Positions 26,301 to 64,000 of a stretch of DNA of 64,000 nucleotides are shown in pieces. The notes under the pieces are model-generated. The model had not been told where the DNA came from and made no database searches. It saw only the letters and a list, made by a program, of their open reading frames with translations. Origin of the DNA: Paraphysomonas bandaiensis (lineage: Eukaryota; Protista; Chrysophyceae); NCBI GenBank assembly GCA_965644295.1, contig CBFFRP010000616.1, positions 62,001-126,000 of the forward strand, in the 5' to 3' direction. A program made the translations under genes and the position numbers. Numbering within the stretch: the first letter of the stretch is position 1; each line of letters begins with the position of its first letter.

Positions 26301-26397
26301 TCCTATAGCTATCATATTCATAGTAGTTTAATATTAGATAGTAGATATAGCTTATATTCAGTTGTAGATAGTAAACTTTTGTCATTTGTAGTTGAGA

Positions 26398-26487
26398 ATG
26401 ATTTGGGGTATAAACCCTGCAAGAAAGTTGATGTTATATATATATATATTCACTGCATTGGGTGTATTATGTGGAAACGCTCTTGGC
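26398..26487 (+). other. Predicted signal peptide
   Basis: MIWGINPARKLMLYIYIFTALGVLCGNALG|DD: basic n-region, hydrophobic core and an A-x-G cleavage site. An alternative ATG lies at 26431. Confidence 0.7.
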
Positions 26488-29400
26488 GATGACTTGCAGT
26501 GTGCCGCATACTCCTCACAAGATGCGGATGACATTTGGTAATTATATTGTGTTAATGATAACATATTTAAGTCTTGCTATAGGGATGCTCTTGGACGATG
26601 TCCAGCATGCACTGCTTTCGAGAAATGCGGTTTCTGCCTATCCACGTTACAGTGTGTTGAGGGCACCAATTCTGGACCGTTGGATGAATCTCCGTGTCCG
26701 TCATGGTCTTTTTCTGGTGAAGAGTGTCCAGGTACGTTGTAACTGAGTTGGGAGTGCATATATAACACTGCATTATAGATATTCCTCACTGCGAAGACTA
26801 CGTCGACTGCGGCTCTTGTGCTCGCATGGAGGCATGTGCATGGTGTGCTTCTGAGAACCTTTGCACTACTATTTCGGATGCATTCTCCAAAGATTGCGGT
26901 GGCCTTGTCTTTGAGCCGCCTTGTCCAGACACTTATGTCGCTGGTAAAAAATATGTGCATACGAACTGACGATATTTGACTACTGCGATGTAGAAAATGT
27001 CATCGTCGGAAATCTTGTCGTTAAGGCTGACCCATCATTCGGTGGTGGTGAACTGAATATTTCAGGTAGTGCTGTATTAAATATCCTGTTGTCTTTATAT
27101 TTACAATGTATACTAGGATCCAAGATTGTACGTGACGAGTATATTCAGTTCCGCATGATTTTGAATTCCTCTAACTTTGAGGTTCAATCTGGTGGAGAAA
27201 TCGACATCCTGTCTGGTAACCAGTCGTCTTACAATGGCATCGGTGGTGATTTGTCTCTTTCTGCTGGCTCTGGCATAAACCCTCAAGGCGGAAGCGGTGG
27301 TTCTGTATCGCTGAAAGCTGGAGACGGTTTTGGTGAAGAGCAGTACGGCGCCGAATCTGGTGTTGGCGGGGCTGTTAGCATTACTGCTGGTGAAGCCATT
27401 GAAGGGACCGGAGGAAATGTTGAAGTTAAGGCTGGCCGTTCAAATCGGGGTAGTGGTGGTGATCTATCACTATTCTCGGGATCTTCCGATGAGGCAAACA
27501 GTGGTTCCGTTACCCTCCTCACCGGGTCATCTGTGGCCGGTCACAGTGGAGGGGCCCACTTCGGCACTGGAGACTCGGATGGCAAATCCGGCAGTGTCTC
27601 TATTCGCACTGGTTTCAGCAGTAATTCTAATGCTGGTAGTGTGACCATTGCTGCTGGGACTTCATCTCTAGGCATCGGTGGCGTCGTGACATTACTTGGA
27701 GGTGATGCGGAGAGAGAGCGTGGTGGAGCTGTTAGGATAGCATCCGGGAAGTCTGGAGAAGGCTTTACATCTGGGACTGTTGAAGTCTTCTCCGCTGATG
27801 GGGCCAGCCTTGGAAAGTCTGGTGATGTTCGCCTGAAGACAGGAACCTCACAGAGTGGAGGGTCCGGTGCAATGTCTCTTGCCACTGGAAATGTCGCGAA
27901 GGAGGGCATGGCTGGTAATATCGTGCTCAGTGTGGGTCATAGTAGATACCATACAGGTGGTGCTGTGGATATTACTGGGGGAGACAGCTCTATGACTGAC
28001 CCAAGCGCAGCCACTATAGGGGGGGGGGTGTCCCTCACAGGTGGCTCAGGCTCCACTATTGGCGGTGATGTCCACCTCATGGGCGGTCGTACCACTAGCT
28101 CTACCTCAGAAAGAGGCGGCTCTGTATCAATCACTGGCGGCGACTCTGTCTCCCTGGGTGGTGGTATCGACCTCATCTCTGGAGGATCTTCGGTAGGTTA
28201 TTCTGGTTCAATTCGTGTACTCAGTGCAGGCAACGCCGGCTTGGATTCTACATCTTCCAGTGGAGATGTGGTGATTGGTACTGGCAGAACTGTATCTAGT
28301 GCTGCCACTGGGGCTGTATCCATCAGCAGTGGATCTGCAGAAGGTACTGGCGAGGTTGGTACTATTACCCTGCAGTCTGGCGCTGCTGCGAGTTCTGTTG
28401 GAGGACAAGTGGATATCATAGGAGGCATGGCATTGGGTTCTTCCTCTGGTGGGTCGACTGTGATTTCCTCAGGTGAGGCAGCTGCAGGCCCTACAGGCTC
28501 TGTTTTCCTGTCAACAGCCTCTTCCACGCGTACCACGGGCGAATTGGCCATGACTTCAGGGCACTCTACCAGTGAAAATTCTGGGCAGCTGACGTTGTCT
28601 ACCGGGGAATCATTAGACATGAGCAGTGGAGACATCGTGCTGACCACTGGGGACTCGAAGGCGGCTGCGGGCGACATATCTATTGTCGGCGGTGTCTCTG
28701 ACTCTCACGGAGGTGATATTCTACTAAGCGGTGGCCAAGGACGAAATACAGGTGGTTCCATCATTCTCTCCGCTGGACCGTCACCAACTGGAACACTTGG
28801 AAATGTTGAGGTCAAGGGCGGCTCTTTCTCGGTTGTGGGAGGTGCAACAGAAGATGTGGATGGTAGTGACATCAGTTTGCTGTCTGGAAGTAGCAACATT
28901 GCGGGATCTGGATCACTCCATCTTGCGACTGCAAACTCCTCTGCATATGGCCCAAGTGGTACTGTTAACATTGAGACTGGGTCTTCTGCCAAAGCTGGTA
29001 CCGGCTCAATTGTACTCCAAACTGGTGACGCTGCTGAGACAGCTGGGTCTGTTGCTCTCAGTGCAGGGTCTAGCGCTGTTGGTGATGGAGCTACTGTTTC
29101 ATTACGCAGTGGAGACTCCTCTGCAAGCTGGGCACGCGGAGGTGATTTTATTGCTCGTGCGGGCGATGGTACCAGTTCTGATAAAGGTGGAGATGGAGGG
29201 AATATAATCGTGCAAGCTGGATCTGCATTCGGAAGAGGTCCAAGTGATGCTGGAGGCAGTGTTGAGGTCATTGGGGGTGACTCTATGGTCGGTCCTTCTG
29301 GTTCCGTATCCATCAGTAGTGGTGGCAGCGTCCAAGGCTCCAGCGGAAATATCGAGATGATTACTAAAGATGCTGGTGTATCAGGTGTCAGCGGTCATGC

Positions 29401-32400
29401 TTCTATCGCAACTGGAATTTCATCGGGTGGTACGTCGGGCACAGTGACCGTCGTGACGGGGGCTGCTATAGATGGCTCAGCGGGTGATATAAAGTTCACA
29501 GTAGGTACTGGCGACAACGGTGATGGTGGCGATATTGCCATAGAGTCAGGACGCACCACTGCAAGTGCCCATAGTGGAGGAGAGATCAGCATTGTTGGTG
29601 GCGAAGGCTCCAGCAGTCACCTCACTGATGGTGGTAATGGCGGGGATGTATCCGTCGTTGGTGGAAGTGGTAAAGGCCCATCCGGAAACGATGATGGTGG
29701 CGATGTCAATGTCTTTGGAGGTTCTGCCTATGGCGGATATGGCGGGGATGTACACGTTCAATCCGGAGCAGGTACCTTGACCTCATCAGGCTCTGTCACC
29801 ATTGCTACCTCTGATGCGGGCGCTGCTGGTACATCTGGTACTGTATCTATCCAATCTGGCACTACAAGCTTTGGAGACTCTGGACATCTTCGTCTCCACA
29901 GTGGTCAAGCGAATTCTGGGCGAGGTGGATATATAGAGCTAAGTGTCGGAGATGGCAATTCTGGTGAAGGTGGACATGTAAGCATTCAAGCTGGAGCAAC
30001 TAGTGACGAACTAGGTGCAACAGGAGGGTTTATATCTATTTCTTCTGGTGCAAGTACTGAAACGTCTTCTGGACTCATTCAGCTGAAGACTGCCAACTCA
30101 GGTGCATTTGGGGTGTCAGGTCAGGTTGAGCTCAAGACTGGTACGTCTGCCAACGGAAATTCTGGATCAGTTGCTGTTAGTACTGGAGTTGCTAAAAGTG
30201 GACGGGGTGGCGATATTCGCATGCTTGTTGGCCGCGGAAACTCCGGAGATGGAGGAGATGTGCTGCTATTCGCCGGGGAAACCGCAGCCTCGTCATCAAC
30301 TGGTGGCGACATTGTCCTAACTGCTGGTGAAGGGACTAGTCGGTCGTACATCAACGGCGGTAATGGTGGTAAGGTTCAGATCTTTGGTGGTGCAAGTCAA
30401 GGTGGAAACGAAGGAAATATTGGTGGCGATGTGGAGATATCTGGCGGCTATGCCAGAGGTGGCAGCGGTGGAAGTATTAGCGTTGTTTCTGGGAGGGGGG
30501 CGTCTACATCATCTGGAGATATTTCAGTAGTTACTGCCAATGCCGGCGAAGAAGGAATCAGTGGAAAGCTCTTGTTCTCGACAGGAACTTCTAGTGACGG
30601 AAACTCTGGAGGAGTTTTCATAAACACTGGTGATGCCGTTGGAGGGAGAGCTGGGTCGCTATCGATGACTGTTGGTTCTGGCAATTCTGGGCCAGGTGGA
30701 GATATAATGCTCTCGGCTGGGAAATCCACTGACAGCGCATCCGGGGGTTCTGTTTCCATTACCACAGGTGCATCTGCATCAACTTCATCCGGAGATGTTA
30801 ACTTGATGACCGCTGATGCGGGCCAGCGCGGCGTTAGTGGATCTTTGCGAATGTCTACTGGAGCATCAACTGCAGGCAACAGCGGGAAGTTCTCTCTTGC
30901 AACTGGGAAGGCAAATTCTGGAGTCGGGGGTAACATTGAGTTGCTCGTTGGATCCGGTAACCTATTTGACGGTGGTGACATTATCGCTATCGCCGGTGAA
31001 AGCTCCGCGTCTGGACGTGAAGGTGGTGATGTTCTTATTTCTGGTGGTCTAGGAAGCAGTATAAGCAGGGACAATGGTGGAGATGGGGGAGATGTCACTA
31101 TTCTCGGTGGTGAGGGACTTGGTGGTAATTCTGCAACTGACACAGGTGGAAATATTTTTTTACGAGGCGGGAAATCTGCATCCTCGTCTGGGGGTTCTGT
31201 TGCAATATCATCAGGTTTTGGCTCCAAAACCTCCAGCGGATCATTTAGTCTAAGTACTGCTAATAGCGGCGTGTCTGGTGTCAGCGGGGCATTTGTGATG
31301 CAGACTGGCGAATCTCATATGGGTGACAGTGGGAGCATTTCAGTCGCATCAGGTAAAGCCACAAGTGGTCGTGGGGGTGATATTGATGTTTCTGTCGGAA
31401 CTGGTGATGATGAAATCGGTGGTGACGTTAGAATTAAAGCCGGTGACTCGACTGCTCGCTCTGGTCGTGGTGGAGATGTTGAAATTTCTGGTGGAGACGG
31501 ATCATTCTCGTACCCTACACTAGACGGTGGTGATGGTGGCTCAGTGTCCCTTTATGGTGGTACAGCTCGTGGTGCAACTGCTGCAGACTTGGGAGGTGAT
31601 ATCACCATATCTGGGGGAATGGCTTCAACCGGTACGGGTGGGTCCGTTTCCGTATTGACCGGTTTCAGCGTTTCCAGAAGTTCTGGTAGTCTCGTTTTAG
31701 GAACTGCGGATGCTGGTACATACGGTGTCTCTGGCACTGTCCAGCTAATATCTGGTACCTCTTCTGGTGGGAATTCAGGCGTCATAGTCATCTCATCTGG
31801 ATCTGCTGAGGAAGGTAGGGCTGGTGATATTTCTGTTGCGGTTGGAACTGGTAACTCAGGAGTTGGTGGGAATCTAACCCTATCTGCCGGTAGTACTTCT
31901 GCAGTGAATGGAGGAATTGGAGGTGATGTGATTATGTCTTCTGGTTTAAGTGAGCGTACCTCCAGTGGAAATATCGATATATCAACTCCCGATTCTGGCA
32001 TTGGTGGAGGTAGCGGTAATGTTGCTGTCCACACTGGTACCGCTGCACTAGACGATGCTGGAAGCATATCACTCATTGCCGGTGATAGTGCTCACTCGAG
32101 AGGTGGTGACGCTATTATTCAAAGTGGTGAGTCATCGACTGGTGATGGTGGCGATATTTATCTATCTGCTGGTCCCACATCATCTGCATCTCCTGGTGAT
32201 ACCGGAGGAAGTATAGTGCTCTCAGCTGGTGAAGGTATTGGTTCAACTGTTGGCACTGGCGGGAACATAAATATTCGCGCTGGTGACTCCCAAGGCCTTC
32301 AAACTGGTGCTGGAGGTGTTGTTACGATTGAGAGTGGTCACTCAACATCTCATAATGGGGGGGATATTTTTCTTACCTCCGGAGCGAGTCAAGGGGGCAC

Positions 32401-35400
32401 CAGTGGCGAAGTTATCATAGAAACGGCTCGTGCCGTATTCAACGGAAGCACTGGTGACTTGAAATTTCGCTCTGGCAGTTCTCCCCTTAAGGACTCTGGT
32501 AATCTAAGTATATCCACAGGCGTTTCACCTCAAGGAACTGCTGGTGATATTCACCTTTCCGTTGGTGGAGGCGGTAGTGGCGTGGGTGGTGGAATAGTGA
32601 TTTCTGCAGGTACTCAACGTGGAGATGGGTCGACTGGTGGATCCGTATCAATTACTACTGGCGGCTCTTCTTCTCGTCGTAGTGGCAACGTGAACATCAA
32701 ATCGCAGGATGGCTCAGGATCTGCTGGAACTGGCTCTGTGTCTATAGGGTCTGGAAATACTTTATTTGACTCCACTGGTGCTCTTAACCTGTTAACTGGG
32801 ACCTCACAACATGGATCGGCAGGTGATATACGAATAACTGCTGGGACATCATTTAGTAGTTCCGGCGGTAATATAGTTCTTGGAGCTGGGAGGTCTGGAC
32901 CTCGAGCTGGTGGCTCGATTTCAATGGTAAGTGGTGAATCGGATTCTTCAGTGAGTGGGTCGGTGTCGATTTCGTCCGCTGCTTCCAATACAGAAGACAG
33001 TGGAAGTGTATCAATCAGCACTGGGTTTGCGCATAGGTCGTCTGGAAATATCACTATTGAAACGTCACCTTCATTGGAACAGGCAGGACATGTAAAGTTG
33101 TCTGCCGGGACTTCATCAGAGGGAGATGGTGGAGATGTTAGGTTGTTTGCAGGAAATTCTTCTGCGAACCTAGGTAATGCAGGCTCTTTGGTTCTGCATG
33201 CTGGTAATGGACACACATCTAATGATCAACCATTCGGGAGTATGGGTGGAAATATCATACTAAGAGGTGGCTCGTCTTCTTCTCAGACTGGTAGTTCTGG
33301 CAATGTGAATATTGATGGTGGTGCTGCGGAATACACAACGGGAGGTGCAATATCCGTTACCAGTGGAAAAGGGGATTTGCTGTCCAGTGGCAGCGTGGCG
33401 ATATCATCCAGCGATAATGACGCTGCAGGAGCGAGTGGCAATTTAGTTCTGAAGACTGGCCAATCACTGCAGGGGTCTTCTGGAGATCTTCACATTATGA
33501 CGGGAGATGCCCCAGCTGGAAATGGGGGAAGCATTACCGTCGCTGTTGGGCAGTCTTCTTCAACAAGTGGAGAAGTATCAGTCTCCGCAGGTTCATCACT
33601 GACTGAAGATGGTGGGAGTGTTAGTATTGCGTCTGGGCGAGCACTTTCTGAAACATCAGCGTCCGGTTATATCGACATCACGTCGCCCTCAGCTCCGAAG
33701 TCTGGTGGTTTGAGCATATCCACTGGCAGTTCATCTTTTCTGCAAAGTGGGTCCATCAATATCGCTACTGGTGACAGTGCTAGTGAATCAAGTGGTGATA
33801 TAGTTGTTTCTGTCGGGCACTCTGGTCAATCAGCGGGGAGTGATGTGATTGTGAATGCTGGAACATCTGTTGGTTCTCATTCTGGTGGAGATGTAGCGAT
33901 CAGTGCAGGCTCAGTAGTTAATCCATCACAAGGTGCTGGTGGAAGAGTATCACTAGAATCAGGAAGTGCAGATGCTGGTGGTGATATTGTACTTCAAAGT
34001 GGTAGTGGAATTCATCAAGTCGGTGGCTCTTTGGAATTGTCGTCGGGGGGATCTGTTTCTGGAGATGGTGGCTCTGTATCTATGCAGTCAGGAAGTGGAC
34101 TCAGCAGTGGTGATGTCATTATGCGATCTGGACAATCATCTGCAGGGGATAGTGGTAGTGTAGATGTCATGACTGGATCTTCGTCTTCAGGTTCAGCTGG
34201 TACAATTTCGTTGTCTGCTGGAGAGAGTGGAGTTGGTAACGGAGCTGATGTTTCTGTATCTGCTGGTGAGGCATTGACTGGTATTGGTGGTAGTTTGACT
34301 TTACGAAGCGGGGGAGGCAAGTCTGCGAGTGGGTCTGTTACCCTTTCGAGTTTTGACTCTTCTGGTGATGCGTCTTCGGGACCTATCCGCGTTGAGTCTG
34401 GTGCTTCTGCGATCGGTGTTTCTGGTGATGTGTCAGTGTCATCAGGTGATTCGAGTGCCGGTTCTGCGGGATCTGTATCTGTAAAGGCTGGTGTGTCTTC
34501 AGCTGGCACAGGATCTCCAGTTACGTTAGGTGCTGGTGATACGCTTGATGGTACTAGCCATGGTGGAGATGTGTCAATTGTGAGCGGCGCATCATCTGCT
34601 AATTCGGGCTCTATGGATTTACATACACCTGTCTCGACTACTTCTAGTGGCGGTATTGACATATCTACTGGTAGTAGCGGTTCTGAAGTCTCAGGCGACA
34701 TATCTATCTCAGTTGGTTCTTCTTCCGATGGTGTTAGCGGCGACATTGCAGTTGTAGTTGGATCTGGCCGAACTCAGGGTGGGGATGTGACTATATCAGC
34801 AGGATCTGTTGAAGGTCTGACTGGAGATGCTGGTGACATAGTACTATCAGGTGGAGATGCGGCAGTAGGTCAATCGACAGGTGGATCAGTATCTGTAACA
34901 GGGGGCTCAAGCTCTGGTGGCTCTGGAGGCTCTTTGGAATTGTCGTCGGGGGGATCTGTTTCTGGAGATAGTGGCTCTGTATCTATGCAGTCAGGAAGTG
35001 GACTCAGCAGTGGTGATGTCATTATGCGATCTGGACAATCATCTGCAGGGGATAGTGGTAGTGTAGATGTCATGACTGGATCTTCGTCTTCAGGTTCAGC
35101 TGGTACAATTTCGTTGTCTGCTGGAGAGAGTGGAGTTGGTAACGGAGCTGATGTTTCTGTATCTGCTGGTGAGGCATTGACTGGTATTGGTGGTAGTTTG
35201 ACTTTACGAAGCGGGGGAGGCAAGTCTGCGAGTGGGTCTGTTACCCTTTCGAGTTTTGACTCTTCTGGTGATGCGTCTTCGGGACCTATCCGCGTTGAGT
35301 CTGGTGCTTCTGCGATCGGTGTTTCTGGTGATGTGTCAGTGTCATCAGGTGATTCGAGTGCCGGTTCTGCGGGATCTGTATCTGTAAAGGCTGGTGTGTC

Positions 35401-56400: not shown

Positions 56401-59400
56401 CGGTGCTGTGAATTCAGGCGGTGTGGTTGATATTCTTGGTGGCGATGGTTCTGGTTTTGATGGTGGTTCTATTTCGTTGAGTAGTGGAGCATCAGATTCA
56501 GCTGGTGCCGGATCTCTTCGATTTTCTAGCGGCTCAGGAATGGAATCATCGGGGACTGTACATCTTATGTCAGGTTTAACTCGTCGGGGTACTACTGGTT
56601 CTGTGTATATTACCACCTCTGAAGGAAATGGAGCAGCTACCGGAGAAGTAAGTTTGCTGAGTGGAAGTTCAGATATGTCTACTGGAGATGTTACTATCAA
56701 AACTGGTGATTCCGGTAATGAAGCTGGTGAAATTGCACTATACGCCGGAGCATCTGATAATTCACGGGGCGGAGACGTTTCCCTCTACTCGGGTACTGGG
56801 GCCACTGGCGGTGACATAGCGCTATCTGCAGGATCAGGGGCGAAGAATACCGGTGGTTCACTCTCCATGCTTTCGGGAAGTGCGCTTGATGTATATTCTA
56901 TGGGCGGGCATGTTGTCATGGGCTCACCAAATTCACCTGGTTTTTCTGGGAATTTGGACTTAAGCACAGGCCGTTCTGAGTCCAGTTCAACAGGAGGTGT
57001 ACGAATTACAACAGGCGCTAGTGTTACAGCAAATTCTGGGGATATATCCTTCCGTGTTGGACAGTCCTCATCTCCTAGTGGTTCGTTTGTTGATATTCGT
57101 GCTGGAGATTCGACTAGTTCTGGTGGGGTTGGCGGGAGAGTCACTGTGGATGGTGGAAGTGGATCGTCTGGTGGTGGCCTTTACTTTAGTGGTGGTATTG
57201 GATCTAATGGTGTTGGAGGAGATGCTGTGTTTGTCGCTGGTGAAGGTCGTGGCAGTGGTGGCTCTTCTGTGCTGAAGGGAGGTTCATCTATTACAGCTAG
57301 TGGTGGCGCAGTAGATATATCTGGTGGTGATAGTATGCTAAGTGGGGGAAGTATTCTTATTACGAGTGGCGCGAGTGCACGGGGTAGTGGTTCGGCTATT
57401 ATATCTACTGCCGCGACTGATTTACAGTCTGGAGATGTTGTTGTTGAGTCTGGTATGACTGGTAGTGGAATAAGTGGGGGCATCGTGTTGTCGACAGGAT
57501 CTTCAACTGATAGTAGCACTGGTGGCATTTCTCTAGTTCCAGGCGATGCGTCTCAACATGGTACAGGAGGAGGAGTCGATGTGAGTGCTGGTTACGGTGC
57601 TGTGGGTGGAGACGTAAACGTGCGTGGCGGGAACAGTATTAGTGGAAATGGCGGATCCTTCACGGTATATACTGGAACATCTAGCGTAAATTCATCTGGT
57701 GTACTTACAATGTCATCGGCTTCAGCAGTCGGTGACTCGGGGAAAGCTATTTTCTCAACTGGAGAATCAGATAGCAGCACAGGTGGATTGATATTGTCAA
57801 CAGGAAACAGCGCTACCTCAACTGCAGGGGAGTTCAAAATTCGTGGTGGATCAAGTGGAGGTGTTACTGGCGCGGATGTTTCTGTTCGAGGTGGTGACTC
57901 CTTGGCTGTTGACGGTTCTGGAGGAAGAGTATCTATCAGTGGGGGCTCAGGTGCTACTGGTGCTGATGTTCATTTGAGTAGTGGTGCTGGTACTACTGGA
58001 TCTGCGGGTTCTTTAATATTAGGGGTTGGTGAAGGATCAGGTATTTCTGCTGGAGGTTCAGTGATGATTGATGCTGGTTTGTCCACGGGGGGTGGAGATG
58101 GTGGTGCCATGTCGCTGCGAGGCGGTGCTGGTCATGTGGGTTCATCATCAGGGGGTGGTGTTTCGATAGAAGGTGGAGTATCTGGGTCAGGTACAGGTGG
58201 TTCGGTATCAGTATCGAGTGGTGCTAGTGCATCTGGGTCATCTGGTTCTTTGTTAGTTTCGTCTGGTCGTTCAATGTCTGAGACTGGTAATGTTGTCTTG
58301 TCATCTGGGAACTCTGCTAGTAGAGCAGGCGATGTGTTGGTCTCAGTGGGAGAGAGCTTTCAACGTGCAGGCAAGTTGATGTTGTCTGGTGGTGCTGGTA
58401 GTGTAGGTGGTGACGTAGTTGTACATGCTGGCTCTGGTTCATCTTCTCGAGGCGGTTCATTATATCTTCTAAGTGGTGCTACTTCAGCATCTGATAGCAG
58501 TGGGTCATTAACGATGGGATCAGAATCATCATCCGCCTCAGGGCCTGTATTATTGGGATCTGGTACATCAGCACTTCGCTCTGGCGAGTTGGAATTGAGA
58601 AGTGGTGACAGCGATTCTGCTAGTGCTGGTAGCGTACTTCTTCATGGTGGATCAAGTGGAGGTGTTACTGGCGCGGATGTTTCTGTTCGAGGCGGTGACT
58701 CCTTGGCTGTTGACGGTTCTGGAGGAAGAGTATCTATCAGTGGGGGCTCAGGTGCTACTGGTGCTGATGTTCATTTGAGTAGTGGTGCTGGTACTACTGG
58801 ATCTGCGGGTTCTTTAATATTAGGGGTTGGTGAAGGATCAGGTATTTCTGCTGGAGGTTCAGTGATGATTGATGCTGGTTTGTCCACGGGGGGTGGAGAT
58901 GGTGGTGCCATGTCGCTGCGAGGCGGTGCTGGTCATGTGGGTTCATCATCAGGGGGTGGTGTTTCGATAGAAGGTGGAGTATCTAGGTCAGGTACAGGTG
59001 GTTCGGTATCAGTATCGAGTGGTGCTAGTGCATCTGGGTCATCTGGTTCTTTGCTAGTTTCCTCTGCATCGTCTGGTTATTCTAGTGGTACGGTAGTTGT
59101 TTCTTCTGGTGATTCGTTTTTGGAAAATGCTGGCGATGTTGTTTTAAGTAGTGGTCGTTCTGGCCGTAGTGCAGTTTCTGGAGGGTCAGTTAGTCTAAGT
59201 AACGATGTCAGCGTAAAAGCCGGTGGCAGTGGTGATATATTGTTTTCCGGCGGGCGAGGGTATAGTGATTTACCTGGTGGTTCAATTAAGCTGCTATCTG
59301 GTGTTTCCTCTTATCGTAGTGGTGATGTTTTAATTAGTTCTGGAGCCAGCGATGAAGAATCTGGGTCTGTTGTTGTAACCAGTATGGACAGTGCAGGAGG

Positions 59401-62400
59401 TACAGCTGGAGCCGTTGAGATTCGTCCTGGGAGTTCCTCTTTTGATGGCGCGGGTATTGCGCTCAGCGGTGGGATTGTTGACGGCGCAGAGGGAAAAGGA
59501 GGAGCTGCGTTCATATCTGGTGGTGATGGTCCTCAGGGTGGTGATGTAGTAATTAGAAGTGGTGTGGGGCTTGTACCTTCATCTGGCCGAATTGATATAA
59601 GTGCTTCAGTTGGTGGAGATATTGGTATTTCTGGTGGCGCAGCGAGTGTCGGTGCAGGTGGTGGAGTGTCTATATCTGGTGGCTCTGCTGACGAATCTGC
59701 TGATGGTGGGTCTGTAGTACTCTTAGGTGGACAGTCTTCTATCGGCAGTGGAGGTGATGTTGCTATATCAAGTGGCTCTGGCATAGAGAGCGTTAGTGGT
59801 TCTGTCAACATTGGTTCGAGTGATGGATATGTGCGTAGTGGTTCAGTGGCACTAGTTAGTGGGTCTTCTCGGGATGGTGCTTCTGGCTCTATTGACGTCA
59901 GATCTGGTGATTCTGATTTCGGTTCTGGTAGTGTATCACTGCTGAGTGGTAATAGCATCTCCGGCATTGGGGGCAATGTAGTTGTGTCGGCTGGAAGTGG
60001 AGTTATTGGTGGAAGCGTACTATTTTCTGCCGGTTCTGGTGAGTCAAATGAAGGAGGAAGCTTGGTTTTCAAGAGTGGAACCTCAGATAAAGCTGAAAGT
60101 GGTGCTCTTGTATTTGCGACTGCTAATTCTGATGGTGTGAGTGGTCTGGGTTCTATAAAGACTGGAAGTAGTAGTACAGAAAGTGGTCCACTTCAGATAG
60201 GTACAGGTGTAAGTACTGCTGGCAGTGCAGGTTCGGTTGGTGTTTTTGTAGGTATCTCTGACACCGAGGGAGGTGCACTCTCACTGGAAAGTGGCGAATC
60301 CGTACGATCATACGGTGGTCGTGCTCTTCTTTCTGGTGGAAGTGGGATGTCAGGAGGTAATGTTATCGTGAGAAGCGGGAATGGAAGAGATGGATCTAAT
60401 GGATCAGTGGGTATATCAGCTGGGCCGTCATCTTCTGGTGGCATGGTCACATTGTCTGGAGGATCACGAGCAGATGCCGGTGACATTGTTATTGTTGGTG
60501 GATCGGGTGCTGATATCATTAATGGTGGTTCTATTAGTTTGACGGGCGGTCAGTCCGATGGAGGTAAAGGAGGATCAGTTCGCGTCTCTAGTGGACACTC
60601 AGCTACTTCAATGTCGAGTGATGTTTTAGTGACGTCTGGTGCTTCTTCTGTTCAATCTGGATCTATCAAAATGTCATCTAACAGCGTCATCGGAGATTCC
60701 GGAACCATATCATTGACTTCTGGAGACTCTGAAGAGACCGGCGCAGGTAATATTGAAATAGCTGTCGGGACTTCTAAACAAACTGGTGGAAAGGTACTTG
60801 TGTCATCTGGCCAGGGTTATAGTGGTGGTAACCTACATTTAAGTGGTGGGGTTGGAACCAATACCGTAGGAGGATCGCTGTCCTTCAGCAGTGGTGTTAG
60901 TCAATCTCTGTCTTCAGCAAGTGGAGACGTAGAGCTGTCTACTTCTGACAGTGTCGGTGCATCTGGAATCATGCAAATATACACTGGGACGTCATCTGGT
61001 GAGACCGGGTCGATTAATATTGCTAGTGGGAGTTCTTCTGATGCCCCAGCTGGTGGTATTTTCATCAAAGGTGGTAGTGGTGCACAATCGGGATCAGATG
61101 TAGTTCTTCATGCAGGCAGTGCATCGTCGGATGAAAGCAAAGGTGGTGGAGTGGATATAACCGCTGGTGATGGCTCGTTCGGCGGTGATGTGGTCATTGG
61201 TTCTGGTAATGGTTTCACCAGTAAATCCGGTGGTGCAATAGACATCAGATCTGGTGGTGGAGGAGTGGTAGTGAGTAGCGGAGACGCGAGCGTGGATGGT
61301 TTGACTGGCGATATTGTGGTCAGCACGGGTTCTGGTACTGCCACTGGATCTCTATCTTTGTCAACTGGGCATGGGTTTGGGACCGTTGCTGGTGGCATTG
61401 AACTAAGTGTTGGGTCCTCTGCAAGCGGTTCTGGATCGGATATATTGTTATCTGCTGGAGATTCTGAGTCAAGTGGTGGCTCTGTATCAGTAGTTGGTGG
61501 AAGTAGTGCCACTGCGTCTGGTGGTGATGTTTTGGTGACTGCCGGTTCAGGTTCAGAATCTGGTCGGGCCGTGCTTCAGACTGCAACGGGTAGTGATAAG
61601 GTAACCTTGTCTGATGGTAGGGTGGATGTGCATTCTTCCGGTGGAATATCATTAAAAGTTCCGGTTTCATCTGATGCTACTTCCACGATGATTGCTTTTG
61701 GTTACGAAGACCCATCAACAGGGAATTCCAAGTATGATCTACGATTACAGCAGTCGTCTGATTCAACTCGGTCAATCGTTGCTAGTGCTCCTCTCCAAGT
61801 GTCCAAGGTTGACTATCCGGCCGATAGTCGCATCAAACGTGATATTGACACCGTGGATACAGATTCTCTTTTGCACCGTTTGAATCAGGTCAAGATTCAG
61901 AGCTACCGCTACACCAAGGACTGGTTAGAAGCCCGTGATGACATAGAGGATATTCGTGTTCGTGGAGTCATTGCTGAGGATTTAGCGCAGGTGTTCCCTG
62001 AGCATGTTTCAGTCATCCCGGAATATAAGCTTGAGGATAGAGGTGTGAGTTTCAAGAATTTTCATCAAGTGGATAAAACATCGTTAATGATGGATATGAT
62101 TGCTGCTATGCAATCTCAGTCCCGGCGATTTTCCACGACGCCAAATTCGGATTCAGAGACTGGAGAGGTCAGAATGAGCTCCAGTTCCTGGTCGGAAGTA
62201 CATGGTGGCACGGAGGATATGTCTTCTGGAAGTGTTTTGATGACTTCTGGCGAGGCTTCTCTGGGCAAGTCTGGCAGTGTGTCGATAAACAGTGGACCTA
62301 GTGGTACTCAGGCGGGCAGTGTTCTATTAGCCCCTGGTACTAGTGGAAATGATGCAGGTGCGGATGTTTCTATTCGCGGTGGTGATTCATTGTCAAGGGT

Positions 62401-64000
62401 ATCTGTTGGCGGTGATGTGACGCTACGCAGTGGTGGTGGTGGGGCTGGGAGTGGAGATGTTTATATCTCAACTGACGAAAGCGATCAGGGCACAGGGTCA
62501 ATAGCACTGATTACTGGTGATAGCGGTGCAGATGCGGCTGGTTCAGTTTCTCTTTCTGCCGGTTCTGGTGCGTCCGAAATCGGAGCAGGAGTGTCTGTTC
62601 ACGGTGGTGACTCATTATTGTCTACTGGTACAGGTGGGTTGTTATCACTTTCAGCTGGCAATGGTGCCTTGGGTGGGGATATAACAATGGTAAGTGGTGA
62701 TGGACATACCAGTGGAGGGGGATCTGTATCTATTAGAGGTGGCAGTAGCCTTTTGTCGTCATTTGGCGGGTCCGTGAATATCGATGGTGGATCGTCTGTT
62801 GGGGGTTCTGGAGGGGACATCATTTTACGAAGTGGACGTAATAGTGGTGATGTAGCGGTTGCTTCGTTATCGATGTCAGGAAGTTCTTCTGGATTGGAGG
62901 GGGGAGCTGTACATTTAATGAGTGGTGTAAATTCCGATTTCACAAGTGGCAAATCCAGTTTTGGGACGTTGTCAACTTTTAGTGACAGTGGGTCTATTGA
63001 ATTCGCTACTGGTACTTCTCTTTCTGGACTTTCTGGATCTATTCTGTTAGCTACTGGGGCTTCTGATTCTGGTACAAGTGGTGACGTTCGCATCAATTCT
63101 GGTTCTGGTGAGTCAAGTCGCCCGGGCAGTATTACAGTGACTTCAGGTTCTGGTCAATTAGGTGGTAATGTAGCCGTTTCTGCTGGTGCCGGCTATAGTG
63201 GACCTGGGGGATCTGTATCGGCTTTGAGTGGAGGTTCTGATAGTAGTTCGTATGGTGGCGTCGCAACCTACGGTTCTGGTGAATCGATGGGATCTAGTGG
63301 ATCTGTGAGTCTTGGAAGTGGCGCTTCTGGTTCTGGTAGCTCTGGAGGGCTCATTCTATCAACTGGAGATGCGGTTTCTAGAGCTGGTGATATCACAGTG
63401 TCTGCGGGCTCTAGCACTTCATCAGAAACTGGCGCTCATGTTGTTATTCGTGGTGGTGATGTGTCTGGTCCTGGTTCTGTTGGTGGAGATGTGTCTGTAT
63501 CCAGTGGGGTTGGTTCAACTGGTGGTAGTGTGGATATTCGCAGTGCTACTGGTTATGACCTTCCCAGTGGATCGATACATATGTCTAGCTCTGATGGGTC
63601 GTTATCGATGTTTGCTGGAGGATTAGGTGATGTTGAGATAGGTTCTGGTAGTTTGCCTGGGTCTCCGGCTGGTCGGATTACTGTCGGTGGTCGTAGTGGT
63701 TCCATCGGAGGCGATGCAACTTTTTTTGCGGGAGATTCCTCAGATGAGTTTATGGGTGGGTCAGCACGTCTGACTAGTGGTTCAGGCTTGAATGGTGGCA
63801 ATCTAGTACTCTTAAGTGGTTATGGATTGTATGATGGTGGCGAAATTGATATTGCTGCTGGTAGTAGTGGAACTGGAACTGGCGGGAACGCAAAGCTTTC
63901 TGGTGGTATGAGTGCAACTGGTGATGGCGGTGCTGTTGGTATTATTGGTGGTAGTGGTGATCATAGAGGTGGCGCTGTTCGTATAGATGGTGGCACTTCT
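26398..64000 (+). CDS. Giant secreted Gly/Ser-rich fibre-like protein (>=12,470 aa, 3' end outside window): signal peptide, 2x PSI, beta-repeat segments separated by three Peptidase_S74/ICA domains
   Basis: Exons 26398-26537, 26583-26731, 26779-26943, 26994-27065 and 27117->64000 splice in frame through four 45-51-nt GT..AG introns. Exon 5 reads in frame +2 wherever I checked, through to ..HRGGAVRIDGGTS at 64000. The track lists no frame +2 ORF there, as expected if no stop occurs. Confidence 0.9.
26500..26930 (+). other. Two tandem PSI-like cysteine-rich domains (exons 1-3)
   Basis: C..RCPACTAFEKCGFCLSTLQCVEG..CPSW..ECP and HCEDYVDCGSCARMEACAWCASENLC..DC..PCP match the PSI pattern C-x5-CxxC-x4/5-CxWC-x5-C. 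Confidence 0.8.
34025..37462 (+). repeat. Intragenic tandem array of a 903-bp (301-codon) unit
   Basis: Unit starts at 34025, 34928, 35831 (partial) and 36989 (partial), with a partial copy at 36281-36988. Offsets 903, 903 and 1158 are all multiples of 3. Confidence 0.9.
39260..39568 (+). other. Peptidase_S74/ICA chaperone domain 1, catalytic dyad intact
   Basis: YS|SDRRIKRDIEDVDSDELLQRLNRVRVTSYRYKEEW..GVIAQELAEVFPEYI..KNFYQVDKMSLMMDMIAAIQ. Ser codon at 39260-39262, Lys codon at 39275-39277. Confidence 0.9.
40203..43575 (+). repeat. Intragenic ~890-bp block present twice plus a partial third copy
   Basis: About 40203-41093 repeats at +1638 (41841-42733), and part of it again at a further +840 (42938-43575). 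The duplicated shadow ORFs in the track show the same offsets. Confidence 0.88.
44150..59037 (+). repeat. Nine copies of a ~390-bp (~130-codon) intragenic module
   Basis: GGTGGATCAAGTGGAGGTGTTACTGGCGCGG...GCTAGTGCATCTGG at about 44150, 45002, 45806, 46610, 52958 (5'-short), 53780, 54581, 57845 and 58646. Confidence 0.88.
48176..48487 (+). other. Peptidase_S74/ICA chaperone domain 2, nucleophile Ser->Ala
   Basis: YP|ADSRIKRDIDTVDTDSLLHRLNQVKIQSYRYTKDW..GVIAEDLAQVFPEHV..KNFHQVDKTSLMMDMIAAMQ. GCC (Ala) at 48176-48178. Confidence 0.88.
61820..62131 (+). other. Peptidase_S74/ICA chaperone domain 3, nucleophile Ser->Ala (duplicate of domain 2)
   Basis: Same sequence as domain 2 at an offset of 13,644 bp; GCC at 61820-61822. 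Confidence 0.88.

What the first reader, a model, noticed from the sequence alone, without database searches (positions are those of the whole stretch)
26398..64000. Giant secreted phage-tail-fibre-like protein in a eukaryote, segmented by multiple intramolecular chaperones
Seen: one spliced gene, absent from the ORF track, encoding >=12,470 aa. Order: signal peptide, two PSI domains, ~4,000 aa of GGxVxIxSGxS-type repeats, S74, ~2,900 aa of repeats, S74, ~4,400 aa of repeats, S74, then more repeats to the window edge. Established: Peptidase_S74/ICA domains trimerise and fold the triple beta-helix N-terminal to them in phage tailspikes and fibres (e.g. K1F endosialidase). They normally occur once per protein, and in eukaryotes they are known mainly from MYRF/MrfA transcription factors. 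Inference: this is a host-encoded extracellular homotrimeric beta-fibre in which each 3-4.5-kaa segment has its own folding nucleus. It could be a surface filament, stalk, hair or extrusome thread. I know of no characterised system with this architecture, but cannot exclude uncharacterised homologues in databases.
Basis: partly seen in the sequence, partly recalled or inferred. Interest (0 to 1): 0.95.

Follow-up and report, generated by a model that had tools for sequence, protein, structure and literature searches.

The report
Giant secreted fibre protein, internal chaperones
A marine single-celled alga has an expressed gene for a secreted, probably three-stranded fibre protein of at least 34,700 residues (titin-sized), punctuated by phage/MYRF-type self-cleaving chaperone domains, some of which have naturally lost their cutting residue; I found no description of this design.

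Summary
Frame +2 has no stop from 26948 to the window's end. An RNA contig from a sister strain removes exactly the four predicted short introns. The window part of the gene is 12,470 codons. It reads: signal peptide, two PSI-like exons, about 800 Gly/Ser-rich 15-residue repeats, and three Peptidase_S74 (ICA) modules.

New here:
- The frame stays open to the contig's end, giving 34,637 codons and five ICA modules. It probably ends on another contig with a phage-type terminal S74, for a total of about 37,000-40,000 residues.
- The internal ICAs resemble MYRF more than phage domains.
- ICA1 keeps the Ser-Lys dyad. ICA2 and ICA3 have Ala at the nucleophile, so they probably trimerise without cutting.
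- A three-copy model scored 0.83 against 0.00 for the best control.
- Strain differences are 23 synonymous to 7 non-synonymous.
- Uncharacterised relatives occur in oomycetes and metagenomes, several with ICAs inside the repeats or several ICAs.

Best reading: a secreted homotrimeric fibre polyprotein whose ICAs act as serial folding nuclei and occasional cut sites. The cellular role is unknown.

The scan had already noted this gene on the neighbouring windows (s1-436726, s1-443456). One of those notes cites a "recently described class" of protist fibrils, which I could not find.

The parts
26340..26397 (+). 5' untranslated leader (at least 58 nt)
   Evidence: The RNA contig of run X10 begins at 26340. 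There is no ATG upstream of 26398 in it.
26398..26537 (+). Exon 1: start codon and predicted signal peptide, with a cut expected after A-L-G
   Evidence: Sequence. The exon's end is fixed by a spliced RNA contig. The signal peptide was judged by eye. The residue after the cut is Asp, not the aromatic residue typical of plastid targeting.
26538..26582 (+). Intron 1 (45 nt, GT..AG)
   Evidence: Skipped in the X10 RNA contig.
26583..26731 (+). Exon 2: first PSI-like cysteine-rich module
   Evidence: PF01437 at 17.6 bits, E 0.0049, under the 23.1 cut-off, but covering profile positions 5-52 of 52.
26732..26778 (+). Intron 2 (47 nt, GT..AG)
   Evidence: Skipped in the X10 RNA contig.
26779..26943 (+). 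Exon 3: PSI domain
   Evidence: PF01437 at 26.3 bits, over the cut-off, E 9.4e-6. This exon is unique in the genome.
26944..26993 (+). Intron 3 (50 nt, GT..AG)
   Evidence: Skipped in the X10 RNA contig. A loose end in metatranscriptome X15 at 26943 reads straight into exon 4.
26994..27065 (+). Exon 4: short linker leading into the first repeat
   Evidence: No Pfam match.
27066..27116 (+). Intron 4 (51 nt, GT..AG)
   Evidence: Skipped in the X10 contig and in a contig of metatranscriptome X15.
27117..64000 (+). Exon 5, window part. It runs on without a stop to the end of contig C616 (window coordinate 130858).
   Evidence: open frame of 34,637 aa. RNA contigs are colinear from 27117 to 32000.
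27119..38995 (+). Repeat block R1: 3,959 aa of 15-residue Gly/Ser-rich repeats
38996..39682 (+). Neck + ICA1 + restart module. The S74 core is 39260-39442. The predicted self-cleavage lies between codons 39257-39259 (Ser) and 39260-39262 (Ser, the nucleophile), with Lys five residues on.
   Evidence: Pfam; motif; PDB match to MyRF 7dc3, E 1.7e-12; AF2 model pLDDT 86 and Foldseek TM 0.72 to 7dc3; trimer model.
39683..47920 (+). Repeat block R2: 2,746 aa
   Evidence: It contains internal near-identical duplications.
47921..48580 (+). Neck + ICA2 module. The S74 core is 48179-48364. The nucleophile position is Ala (GCC at 48176-48178) and the Lys is kept, so it is predicted not to cleave.
   Evidence: MyRF S587A is not cleaved (PMC8326128).
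48581..61564 (+). Repeat block R3: 4,328 aa
61565..62224 (+). Neck + ICA3 module. The S74 core is 61823-62008, with Ala (GCC at 61820-61822) at the nucleophile position. It is a 99.7% DNA copy of the ICA2 module.
62225..64000 (+). Start of repeat block R4, which continues beyond the window

Best explanation
This is a real, expressed nuclear gene of a marine silicon-transporting stramenopile alga. It encodes a secreted polyprotein that most likely assembles as a parallel homotrimer into very long, thin fibres.

Shown:
- The gene has a 5-exon structure with an uninterrupted last exon of at least 103.7 kb.
- The encoded order is signal-peptide-like start, PSI head, then about 15-residue Gly/Ser-rich repeats. 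Each repeat carries one short hydrophobic strand.
- These blocks are interrupted by five neck+ICA (Peptidase_S74) modules, three of them in the window.

Inferred mechanism:
- As the chain enters the ER, each ICA module brings three chains into register through its C-terminal helix bundle. It then nucleates folding of the repeat block upstream of it. A shaft of thousands of residues therefore need not wait, possibly for an hour or more, for a single C-terminal chaperone.
- ICA1 keeps the Ser-Lys dyad, as does ICA5 beyond the window. These then cut just before the Ser, which releases the PSI-headed first fibre (about 4,200 residues per chain).
- ICA2 and ICA3, and ICA4 beyond the window, carry Ala at the nucleophile, like the uncleavable MyRF S587A mutant. 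They stay in the chain as permanent trimeric nodes.
- A phage-type S74 on contig C641 probably caps the whole protein and is then shed.

The product would be an extracellular or surface filament system. Which structure it builds (flagellar or surface hairs, matrix or adhesive threads) is not known.
For: - Gene and splicing.
- Transcription in a sister-strain RNA contig (a spliced transcript from run X10) and in two marine metatranscriptomes.
- Purifying selection: 23 synonymous to 7 non-synonymous differences between strains in 4.9 kb. The ICA paralogues are saturated at synonymous sites (pS 0.75-0.81) while pN is 0.31-0.33.
- S74 membership: Pfam 84.7 and 35.6 bits; PDB MyRF ICA E 1.7e-12; AF2 model pLDDT 86 with Foldseek TM 0.72 and rmsd 2.1 to 7dc3, followed by endosialidase and T5 fibre chaperones; every nearest Atlas cluster listed carries PF13884.
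- Trimer: three copies of repeats + neck + ICA1 scored ipSAE 0.83, against 0.00 for the best of 3 controls. pLDDT was 75 and the runs agreed in at least 94% of contacts. The mark was reached by 21 of 30 solved homomers and 0 of 23 single chains in the tool's calibration. Contacts run from residue ~24 to 312, so they include the repeats.
- Dyad status. S587A and K592A abolish MyRF cleavage, and cleavage needs the trimer (PMC8326128).
- Dead nucleophiles recur in relatives: 10 Ala and 4 other residues among 48 aligned modules.
- Relatives also have ICAs inside the repeats or several ICAs: P0001, P0002, L023, L031, L034.
- No membrane-spanning stretch, and almost no Cys outside the head.
- The only non-repeat islands in the frame are the N-terminus and the ICA modules.
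Against: - The fold of the repeats is not shown. A single-chain AF2 model of 400 repeat residues was unconfident (pLDDT 39).
- The trimer pass may come from memory of solved ICA trimers. The tool was calibrated on two copies, not three.
- Secretion rests on a signal peptide judged by eye.
- Cleavage, trimerisation and location are untested.
- Only the first 5.7 kb of the gene was compared with independent reads. The gene is full of 95-100% identical internal duplications of 0.3-6.5 kb, so segment lengths and copy numbers could be mis-assembled.
- There is no evidence that a full-length transcript or protein of this size is made.
Confidence: 0.6

Rival explanations
1. The protein is a secreted gel, mucilage or adhesive rather than a stiff fibre. 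In this view the Gly/Ser-rich blocks are largely flexible and probably glycosylated. The ICA modules serve only to tie three chains together at intervals and to cut the precursor.
For: Gly+Ser make up 46% of residues and Cys is almost absent. The monomer model of the repeats was unconfident. No Pfam, PHROG or Atlas family names the repeats.
Against: There is a strict 15-residue spacing of an alternating hydrophobic strand, V-x-[LIV]. In the trimer model the contacts reach about 80 residues into the repeats. Replacement changes in the repeats are under purifying selection. In every solved case I know of, ICA domains sit after trimeric beta-structured stalks (PMC8326128).
Confidence: 0.2
2. The gene is a viral fibre gene, from a polinton-like virus or a giant virus, that sits in the genome and serves a virus rather than the cell.
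For: Polinton-like viruses integrated in protist genomes carry large modular fibre proteins (up to 3.9k aa) with a single C-terminal Peptidase_S74 (PMC12220804). The putative terminal S74 on C641 is phage-like.
Against: The gene has four spliceosomal introns, a PSI head and a signal peptide, and it is expressed in a sister-strain RNA contig. No viral family was found among the upstream ORFs scanned. The internal ICAs are MYRF-like. Related genes occur in several oomycetes. The same paper reports that ochrophyte PLVs lack this domain.
Confidence: 0.05
3. The size and segment pattern are largely an assembly artefact, or the locus is a decaying repeat array that is not translated as one chain.
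For: There are many 95-100% identical internal duplications. The contig breaks inside a 273-nt tandem array. Contigs of an independent DNA sample (X3) carry 1-nt deletions.
Against: All X3 deletions lie in homopolymer runs. RNA contigs from other runs cover four of the in-exon sites that stand in a sole contig (30495, 30926, 31155 and 31190) and do not carry the deletions. A frame of 34,637 codons without one stop cannot persist without selection. The synonymous to non-synonymous ratio is 23:7. The divergent ICA1, ICA2 and ICA5 modules (about 50-55% identical) cannot be assembly duplicates.
Confidence: 0.05
4. The protein is a MYRF-like membrane-tethered regulator, released by ICA cleavage.
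For: The internal ICA domains are closest to MYRF among solved structures.
Against: There is no NDT80/PhoG DNA-binding domain, no MYRF_ICA (PF13887) hit and no convincing membrane-spanning stretch. The start looks like a cleavable signal peptide, so the whole chain would be luminal or extracellular.
Confidence: 0.01

Closest known systems
MYRF / MrfA intramolecular chaperone autocleavage (ICA) domain (PDB 7dc3; PMC8326128, PMC3742443)
   Same: The internal modules are the same domain: E 1.7e-12 by sequence, and TM 0.72 with about 30% identity by fold. They share the S-D-x-R-x-K Ser-Lys dyad in ICA1, a short beta stalk before the cut site, and a helix after it that forms the trimeric bundle. 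The domain works inside a eukaryotic protein, in the secretory-pathway membrane system.
   Different: MYRF has one ICA, an NDT80 DNA-binding domain before it and a membrane anchor after it, and it is about 1,100 aa long. Here there are five ICAs in one chain, thousands of fibre repeats on both sides, no DNA-binding domain and no anchor. Three copies are naturally Ser-to-Ala.
Phage tailspike and tail-fibre C-terminal chaperone (K1F endosialidase 3gw6, T5 L-shaped fibre 4uw8, GA-1 3gud; MEROPS S74)
   Same: The logic is the same: a trimerising chaperone placed after a long trimeric beta-structured shaft, which cuts itself off once folding is complete. The fold matches, though more weakly (Foldseek E 8e-4 to 5e-3). 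The putative terminal domain on C641 is of this kind (PHROG tail-fibre families to E 4.5e-24).
   Different: Phage proteins have one chaperone at the very C-terminus and are at most a few thousand residues long. Here the chaperones sit inside the chain, the shaft resumes after each, and the protein is 10-100 times longer and encoded by a spliced host gene.
S74-capped fibre genes of the same genome (contigs C427, C297, C664; scan notes s1-440724, s1-455840)
   Same: They are large secreted Gly/Ser-repeat proteins ending in the same phage-like S74 plus coiled coil as C641.
   Different: Those have a single terminal S74, open frames of about 4,770 aa (1,306 aa on C664) and, according to the earlier notes, an EGF-type head. 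Only the present gene has the PSI head and the internal MYRF-like modules.
Polinton-like-virus fibre proteins with terminal Peptidase_S74 (PMC12220804)
   Same: They are large modular fibre proteins in protist genomes with an S74 chaperone.
   Different: They have a single terminal S74, a viral gene context and a size up to 3.9k aa. The paper reports them as absent from ochrophyte PLVs.
Giant proteins: titin and PKZILLA-1 (10.1101/2024.01.29.577497)
   Same: The size class is the same. PKZILLA-1 has 45,212 aa and titin is about a quarter smaller. This gene has at least 34,756 aa on one contig and probably 37,000-40,000.
   Different: They are unrelated in sequence and function. This gene has nearly all of its coding sequence in one exon.

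Membership tests
Peptidase_S74 / ICA domain (PF13884) | Match to the family profile above the curated cut-off | tested here: met
   84.7 bits for ICA1 and ICA2 together and 35.6 bits for ICA3, against a cut-off of 22. The genome-wide scan gives 58.1 bits for ICA1 and 43.8 bits each for ICA2 and ICA3.
Peptidase_S74 / ICA domain (PF13884) | Fold like solved ICA domains | tested here: met
   The AF2 model of the ICA1 module has pLDDT 86.2. Its best PDB matches are 7dc3 (TM 0.69-0.73, rmsd 2.1-2.2), then 3gw6, 4uw8 and 3gud. All nine Atlas clusters listed carry PF13884.
Peptidase_S74 / ICA domain (PF13884) | Ser-Lys catalytic dyad (S911/K916 of endoNF, S587/K592 of MyRF) | tested here: inconclusive
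   ICA1 has Ser and Lys in place. ICA2 and ICA3 have Ala (GCC) at the Ser position and keep the Lys. So one of the three in-window copies meets the feature and two do not.
Peptidase_S74 / ICA domain (PF13884) | Homotrimerisation | tested here: met
   In silico only. The three-copy model scored 0.83 against 0.00 for the best control, with pLDDT 75. The pass may come from memory of solved ICA trimers.
Peptidase_S74 / ICA domain (PF13884) | Autoproteolytic release | not testable with these tools
   This needs expression of constructs or N-terminal peptide mapping.
Phage-type tail fibre / tailspike | A single chaperone at the extreme C-terminus, followed by the stop codon | tested here: not met
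   All three in-window ICAs are followed by thousands of further repeat residues. Only the domain on C641, outside the window, is terminal.
Phage-type tail fibre / tailspike | Viral gene context | tested here: not met
   The gene has spliceosomal introns and is expressed in a sister-strain RNA contig. Upstream ORFs gave no viral family. The flanks were not searched exhaustively.
MYRF / MrfA family | NDT80/PhoG DNA-binding domain before the ICA, and a membrane anchor after it | tested here: not met
   Pfam finds only PF13884 in the big exon. The non-repeat islands are the ICA modules alone. The highest 19-residue hydropathy, 1.71, lies in a Gly/Ala/Val repeat.
PSI domain (PF01437) | Match above the curated cut-off | tested here: inconclusive
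   Exon 3 scores 26.3 bits (met). Exon 2 scores 17.6 bits, under the 23.1 cut-off, but at full profile length.

The most novel reading that the evidence does not exclude
The locus encodes one polypeptide of about 40,000 residues: 34,756 on contig C616, plus 2,887 on C621 and 2,466 on C641. Nearly all of it comes from a single exon of more than 110 kb. That would make it larger than titin, second only to PKZILLA-1, and the longest uninterrupted coding exon I know of. Its internal ICA domains would form a previously undescribed assembly system. In that system, serial trimerisation checkpoints let micrometre-long three-stranded fibres fold piece by piece during a translation that lasts hours. Active copies would work as programmed cut sites that set fibre length. 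Conserved Ser-to-Ala copies would stay as permanent nodes.
Probability: 0.4. Interest if true: 0.9.

Novelty: new variant of a known kind. Interest (0 to 1): 0.8.

Why it matters
ICA/S74 domains are the textbook case of a chaperone that folds a trimeric fibre and then removes itself. They are known as single, terminal domains of phage proteins, and as the single cleavage module of MYRF transcription factors. Here the same device is used many times inside one eukaryotic secreted protein. Both cutting and naturally non-cutting versions are conserved across relatives.

If the model holds, it shows three things:
- How a cell can fold a three-stranded rod tens of thousands of residues long.
- A natural experiment on separating the chaperone role of the ICA from its protease role.
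- A candidate structural protein for so far unassigned filaments of stramenopile cells.

It is also one of the largest protein-coding genes seen anywhere, and standard gene calling misses it: no protein in the searched collections is more than 54% identical to the neck+ICA1 module.

Tried and rejected
- AF2 on 400 repeat residues as a single chain without an alignment gave pLDDT 39, so it is uninformative about the fold.
- Tandem Repeats Finder found no array in 26398-64000 at score 200 or above. The repeats are too divergent at the DNA level, apart from higher-order duplications.
- Pfam on nine upstream ORFs gave only a sub-threshold UBZ match, so it says nothing about the neighbours.
- PHROGs on a repeat-only block found nothing.
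- An exact-pattern scan of metagenome contigs for the Ala-type ICA site found nothing.
- The search for related loci failed with the broad alignment A1 and worked with the narrower A2.
None found a described eukaryotic multi-ICA fibre. None found the "recently described class of giant trimeric protist fibrils" named in scan note s1-436726.
- The organism's name was not resolved. At least seven silicon-transporter genes are present, but the nearest named relative is a chrysophyte-labelled entry at 66%, so the earlier guess of "diatom" is not established.
- A MYRF-like regulator and an assembly artefact were considered and rejected (see the rival explanations).
- I did not build, translate or search the joined five-exon coding sequence.

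Full report

Yes. Frame +2 carries no stop codon from 26948 to the last base of the window (12,351 codons). It is the only stop-free stretch longer than 500 codons in any of the six frames. The translation is 23.2% Gly and 22.7% Ser and has almost no Cys.

A 7,522-nt contig from run X10 starts at 26340. The run is listed as "RNA?", but this contig is plainly a spliced transcript. It skips 26538-26582, 26732-26778, 26944-26993 and 27066-27116 (45-51 nt, GT..AG) and then runs colinear with the genome to at least 32000. A marine metatranscriptome (X15) shows the fourth splice, and a loose end at 26943 reads on into exon 4. Two metatranscriptomes (X15, X16) hold pieces of exon 5, nearly all of them identical to the window.

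They were searched one by one by reference.

**2. What the pieces are.**

- Exon 1 starts with a sequence that looks like a cleavable signal peptide. It has basic residues, a 15-residue hydrophobic core and A-L-G before the cut. This was judged by eye, because no predictor was available. The next residue is Asp rather than the aromatic residue of the plastid-targeting motif, which points to the ordinary secretory route. That last step rests on established knowledge of heterokont targeting signals.
- Exon 3 is a PSI domain, at 26.3 bits against a cut-off of 23.1. Exon 2 matches the same profile over its full length but scores only 17.6 bits.
- Exon 5 is built of repeats with a basic period of 15 residues (range 13-17). 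The consensus is G-G-[SD]-V-x-[LIV]-x-[SGA]-G-x-[SG], which means one short alternating hydrophobic strand per unit. There are at least 603 strict copies in the window, out of about 800 possible.
- The only non-repeat islands are the N-terminus and the neck+S74 modules.

Pfam PF13884 is well over its cut-off for all three in-window copies.

| Segment | Window coordinates | Size / note |
|---|---|---|
| R1 | 27119-38995 | 3,959 aa |
| ICA1 module | 38996-39682 | Ser-Lys dyad intact |
| R2 | 39683-47920 | 2,746 aa |
| ICA2 module | 47921-48580 | Ala at nucleophile |
| R3 | 48581-61564 | 4,328 aa |
| ICA3 module | 61565-62224 | Ala at nucleophile |
| R4 | from 62225 | continues beyond the window |

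**3. The gene is far larger than the window.**

The window is G000:C616:62001-126000. With the rest of the contig fetched, the same frame stays open to the contig's last base: 34,637 codons. The genome-search tool reports the same figure independently. With the head exons, this makes 34,756 residues on one contig. There are five neck+ICA modules:

| Module | Residue (counted from 26948) | Motif |
|---|---|---|
| ICA1 | 4105 | S-S-D-R-R-I-K |
| ICA2 | 7077 | P-A-D-S-R-I-K |
| ICA3 | 11625 | P-A-D-S-R-I-K |
| ICA4 | 15163 | P-A-D-S-R-I-K |
| ICA5 | 25355 | S-S-D-E-R-I-K |

The contig ends inside a tandem array of a 273-nt (91-aa) unit, about 52 copies at roughly 90% identity. The same array fills the small contig C621, which is 8,663 nt and open throughout. 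It also opens contig C641. C641 then continues through a second kind of roughly 15-residue repeat (G-L-T-V-x-G-A-G-L-K-V) to a phage-type S74 (V-P-S-D-R-R-L-K), a coiled coil and a stop.

The PSI exon and the internal neck+ICA modules exist only once in the assembly. C621 and C641 are therefore unlikely to be alleles and are probably the missing 3' part of this gene. That would give 37,222 residues with C641 alone, or 40,109 with both. This join is an inference; no read spans it. For scale, PKZILLA-1 has 45,212 residues and is said to be about 25% larger than titin (10.1101/2024.01.29.577497).

**4. Is it a functional coding sequence?**

- The transcript of the sister strain (organism B) differs from the window at 30 sites in 4.9 kb of exon 5. 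Of these, 23 are synonymous and 7 are not, and there are no indels.
- Contigs of an independent DNA sample (X3) carry 1-nt deletions. Every one lies in a homopolymer run (G5-G9, A5, T4-T7). RNA contigs from other runs cover four of the in-exon sites that stand in a sole contig (30495, 30926, 31155 and 31190) and do not carry the deletions. I read these deletions as sequencing errors.
- ICA1, ICA2 and ICA5 are old paralogues. Synonymous sites are saturated (pS 0.75-0.81), while pN is 0.31-0.33 and amino-acid identity is 52-55%. ICA2, ICA3 and ICA4 are identical over 200 codons.
- At the DNA level the gene is full of 95-100% identical duplications of 0.3-6.5 kb. One example is 47507-49036 = 61151-62680. 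This indicates ongoing unequal exchange. It also means that copy numbers are the least secure part of the assembly.

**5. What kind of S74?**

Among solved structures the ICA1 module matches the MyRF ICA domain best (7dc3, E 1.7e-12). Phage fibres follow at E about 0.004-0.006. An AF2 model built on 48 relatives (pLDDT 86.2) gives 7dc3 as the top Foldseek match (TM 0.69-0.73, rmsd 2.1-2.2, about 30% identity). The endosialidase, T5 fibre and GA-1 chaperones come next. All nine nearest ESM-Atlas clusters listed carry PF13884.

The terminal domain on C641 is the reverse case. It matches PHROG tail-fibre families to E 4.5e-24, its best PDB match is a phage long-tail-fibre subunit, and it is only 30% identical to ICA1. 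The same terminal type ends three other fibre genes of this genome, on C427, C297 and C664. So the genome holds two S74 kinds, and only this gene holds the internal, MYRF-like kind.

**6. Active and dead copies.**

In MyRF, S587 and K592 (equivalent to S911 and K916 of endosialidase) form the catalytic dyad. S587A and K592A are not cleaved at all, and cleavage needs the trimer (PMC8326128). The crystallised trimer 7dc3 itself reads Ala at that position in the alignment.

ICA1 has Ser and Lys. ICA2 and ICA3 have Ala (codon GCC) and Lys. I therefore predict that ICA1 cuts just before its Ser (between codons 39257-39259 and 39260-39262). I predict that ICA2 and ICA3 trimerise but stay in the chain.

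This is not a local accident. Among 48 aligned modules from this gene and its relatives, the nucleophile position is Ser in 34, Ala in 10 and another residue in 4. Several of the non-Ser copies have also lost the Lys.

**7. Trimer.**

I modelled three copies of a 316-residue piece: about 115 repeat residues, the neck and ICA1.

- The score (ipSAE) was 0.83, against 0.00 for the best of three controls.
- pLDDT was 75, and the three runs shared at least 94% of their contacts.
- In the tool's calibration, 21 of 30 solved homomers and 0 of 23 single chains reached the mark.
- The calibration used two copies rather than three, and the tool warns that a pass may come from memory when a like complex has been solved, as is the case here.
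- About 1,400-1,550 contacts run from residue ~24 to 312, so the model intertwines the repeats and not only the ICA.

A 400-residue repeat piece modelled as a single chain was unconfident (pLDDT 39), with one short strand per repeat. This fits an obligate oligomer but proves nothing.

**8. Relatives.**

An exhaustive profile-free search with the ICA1 module found 870 cluster representatives at E of 0.001 or better, and 44 at E of 1e-30 or better. None was more than 54% identical over most of the query, although two short fragments reach about 70% over half of it or less. Most are fragments from metagenomes.

- The named relatives are all uncharacterised oomycete proteins: Phytophthora oleae, Nothophytophthora, Aphanomyces euteiches, A. 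astaci and Achlya hypogyna. MYRF-type proteins such as the Cavenderia one appear much further down the list.
- Two unannotated eukaryotic assemblies hold close relatives with several modules only about 390 residues apart. P0001 has S-S-D, then T-A-D, then P-D-D. P0002 has S-S-D, then A-A-D.
- An HSP70 on P0002's contig clusters at 90% or more with a Bolivina argentea (foraminifer) entry. The family may therefore reach Rhizaria, or organisms living with them.
- Metagenome loci show Gly/Ser-rich frames of up to 3,345 residues before an ICA, and repeats resuming after it (L023, L031, L034).
- The repeat block itself resembles only unnamed Atlas clusters with oomycete members.

ICAs set inside the repeats, active or dead, are therefore a family trait and not a peculiarity of this assembly.

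**9. The organism.**

The genome (62.6 Mb) has at least seven silicon-transporter genes. The nearest named relative of one of them is an entry labelled Ochromonas triangulata, at 66%. No diatom name appears among the listed hits. I can say only that it is a marine silicon-transporting stramenopile alga. The gene is transcribed in the sister-strain run (a spliced transcript) and in open-water metatranscriptomes.

**10. How it most likely works.**

Shown: the gene structure, its transcription, the selection on it, the domain identity, the dyad status of each copy, and an in-silico trimer.

Inferred:
- The chain enters the ER.
- Each ICA, as it emerges, brings three chains into register and nucleates folding of the block before it. 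With one terminal chaperone only, the first residues would have to wait for the whole translation. At a few residues per second that would take well over an hour for 35,000-40,000 residues.
- ICA1, ICA5 and the terminal S74 then cut. The products would be three. The first is a PSI-headed fibre of about 4,200 residues per chain. The second is a middle fibre of 21,250 residues, carrying ICA1 at its start and three uncut nodes. The third is a distal fibre that includes the 91-residue array.
- If the rise per residue is like that of known trimeric beta-helices or beta-spirals (roughly 0.3-0.9 Å, from memory), the pieces would be 0.1 to about 2 µm long.

Where the fibres go is unknown. For this gene I can neither support nor exclude that.

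**11. Rivals.**

- A flexible secreted gel or adhesive tied at ICA nodes (0.2). This is disfavoured by the strict strand periodicity, the selection on the repeats and the modelled contacts within them.
- A resident viral fibre gene (0.05). Polinton-like viruses do carry S74-capped fibres of up to 3.9k aa (PMC12220804). But this gene is spliced, PSI-headed, expressed without any sign of infection, and conserved in oomycetes.
- An assembly artefact or a dead locus (0.05). This is contradicted by the open frame, the 23:7 ratio and the divergent ICA paralogues.
- A MYRF-like regulator (0.01). There is no DNA-binding domain and no anchor.

**12. Novelty.**

S74-capped trimeric fibres and the MYRF ICA are both known, so this is a new variant of a known kind. 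What I found described nowhere is the combination of:
- several ICAs inside one chain;
- conserved, naturally non-cutting copies;
- a eukaryotic host gene of titin size, with nearly all its coding sequence in one exon.

All ten paper searches gave nothing relevant. The library lacks most subscription journals, so this is not proof of absence.

The scan had already noted the same gene on the adjoining windows. These notes are s1-436726 (with a follow-up), s1-443456, s1-443492 (the Ser-to-Ala copy), s1-436787 and s1-443626. I checked their claims on the sequence and they hold. The follow-up of s1-436726 calls the protein a variant of [quoted passage not shown]. I could not find that paper. If it exists and covers this family, the novelty shrinks to the internal and dead ICAs and the size.

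Noticed in passing
window 116681-130858 in extended coordinates (= L008/L009, C616:178681-192858); L012 (C621); L010/L011 (C641): The contig ends inside a tandem array of a 273-nt (91-aa) unit, about 52 copies at roughly 90% identity. The same array fills contig C621 and opens C641 (minus strand). C641 then runs through G-L-T-V-type repeats to a phage-like terminal S74, a coiled coil and a stop at L010:4896. This is probably the missing 3' end of the gene.
   Followed up: partly
window 34022-37462, 40201-43585, 44144-47031, 52925-55003, 57840-59067; 47507-49036 = 61151-62680: The big exon holds many 95-100% identical internal duplications of 0.3-2.7 kb, with higher-order units of about 800-900 nt. 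Beyond the window there is a 6.5-kb pair at 99.8%. This is a sign of ongoing unequal exchange and a risk for the assembly's copy numbers.
   Followed up: partly
window 40945-41943, minus strand: The only listed ORF of 300 aa or more in the window (332 aa) lies antisense inside the repeat exon. It is most likely a by-product of the repeat composition and not a gene.
   Followed up: no
G000 contigs C427:112842-113018, C297:482898-483074, C664:7516-7692 (L016-L018): Three further genes end in the same phage-like S74 plus coiled coil as C641. Their open frames are 4,772, 4,777 and 1,306 aa. None has the internal MYRF-like module.
   Followed up: partly
L014:756-2984 (contig of relative P0002, assembly GCA_024449875.1): The HSP70 next to a multi-ICA relative clusters at 90% or more with a EukProt entry of the foraminifer Bolivina argentea. 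The family may extend to Rhizaria or to organisms associated with them.
   Followed up: no
G000:C348:104563-106224 (L015:1324-2985) and six other loci: The genome has at least seven silicon-transporter (PF03842) genes. The nearest named relative of one is labelled Ochromonas triangulata (66%), and no diatom name appears among the listed hits. The earlier guess of 'diatom' for this genome is therefore not established.
   Followed up: partly
window 26946, 28025-28032, 30495, 30719, 30743, 30926, 31155, 31190, 31216, 31613: Contigs of an independent DNA sample (X3) show small deletions (mostly 1 nt, one of 4 nt) at these places. All lie in homopolymer runs. RNA contigs that cover four of them (30495, 30926, 31155, 31190) lack the deletions. 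I read them as sequencing errors of that run.
   Followed up: yes
extended frame, residue 29408 (beyond the window): There is a single Cys in the whole 34,580-residue exon-5 part on C616, and only 18 Trp. All other Cys sit in the PSI head.
   Followed up: no
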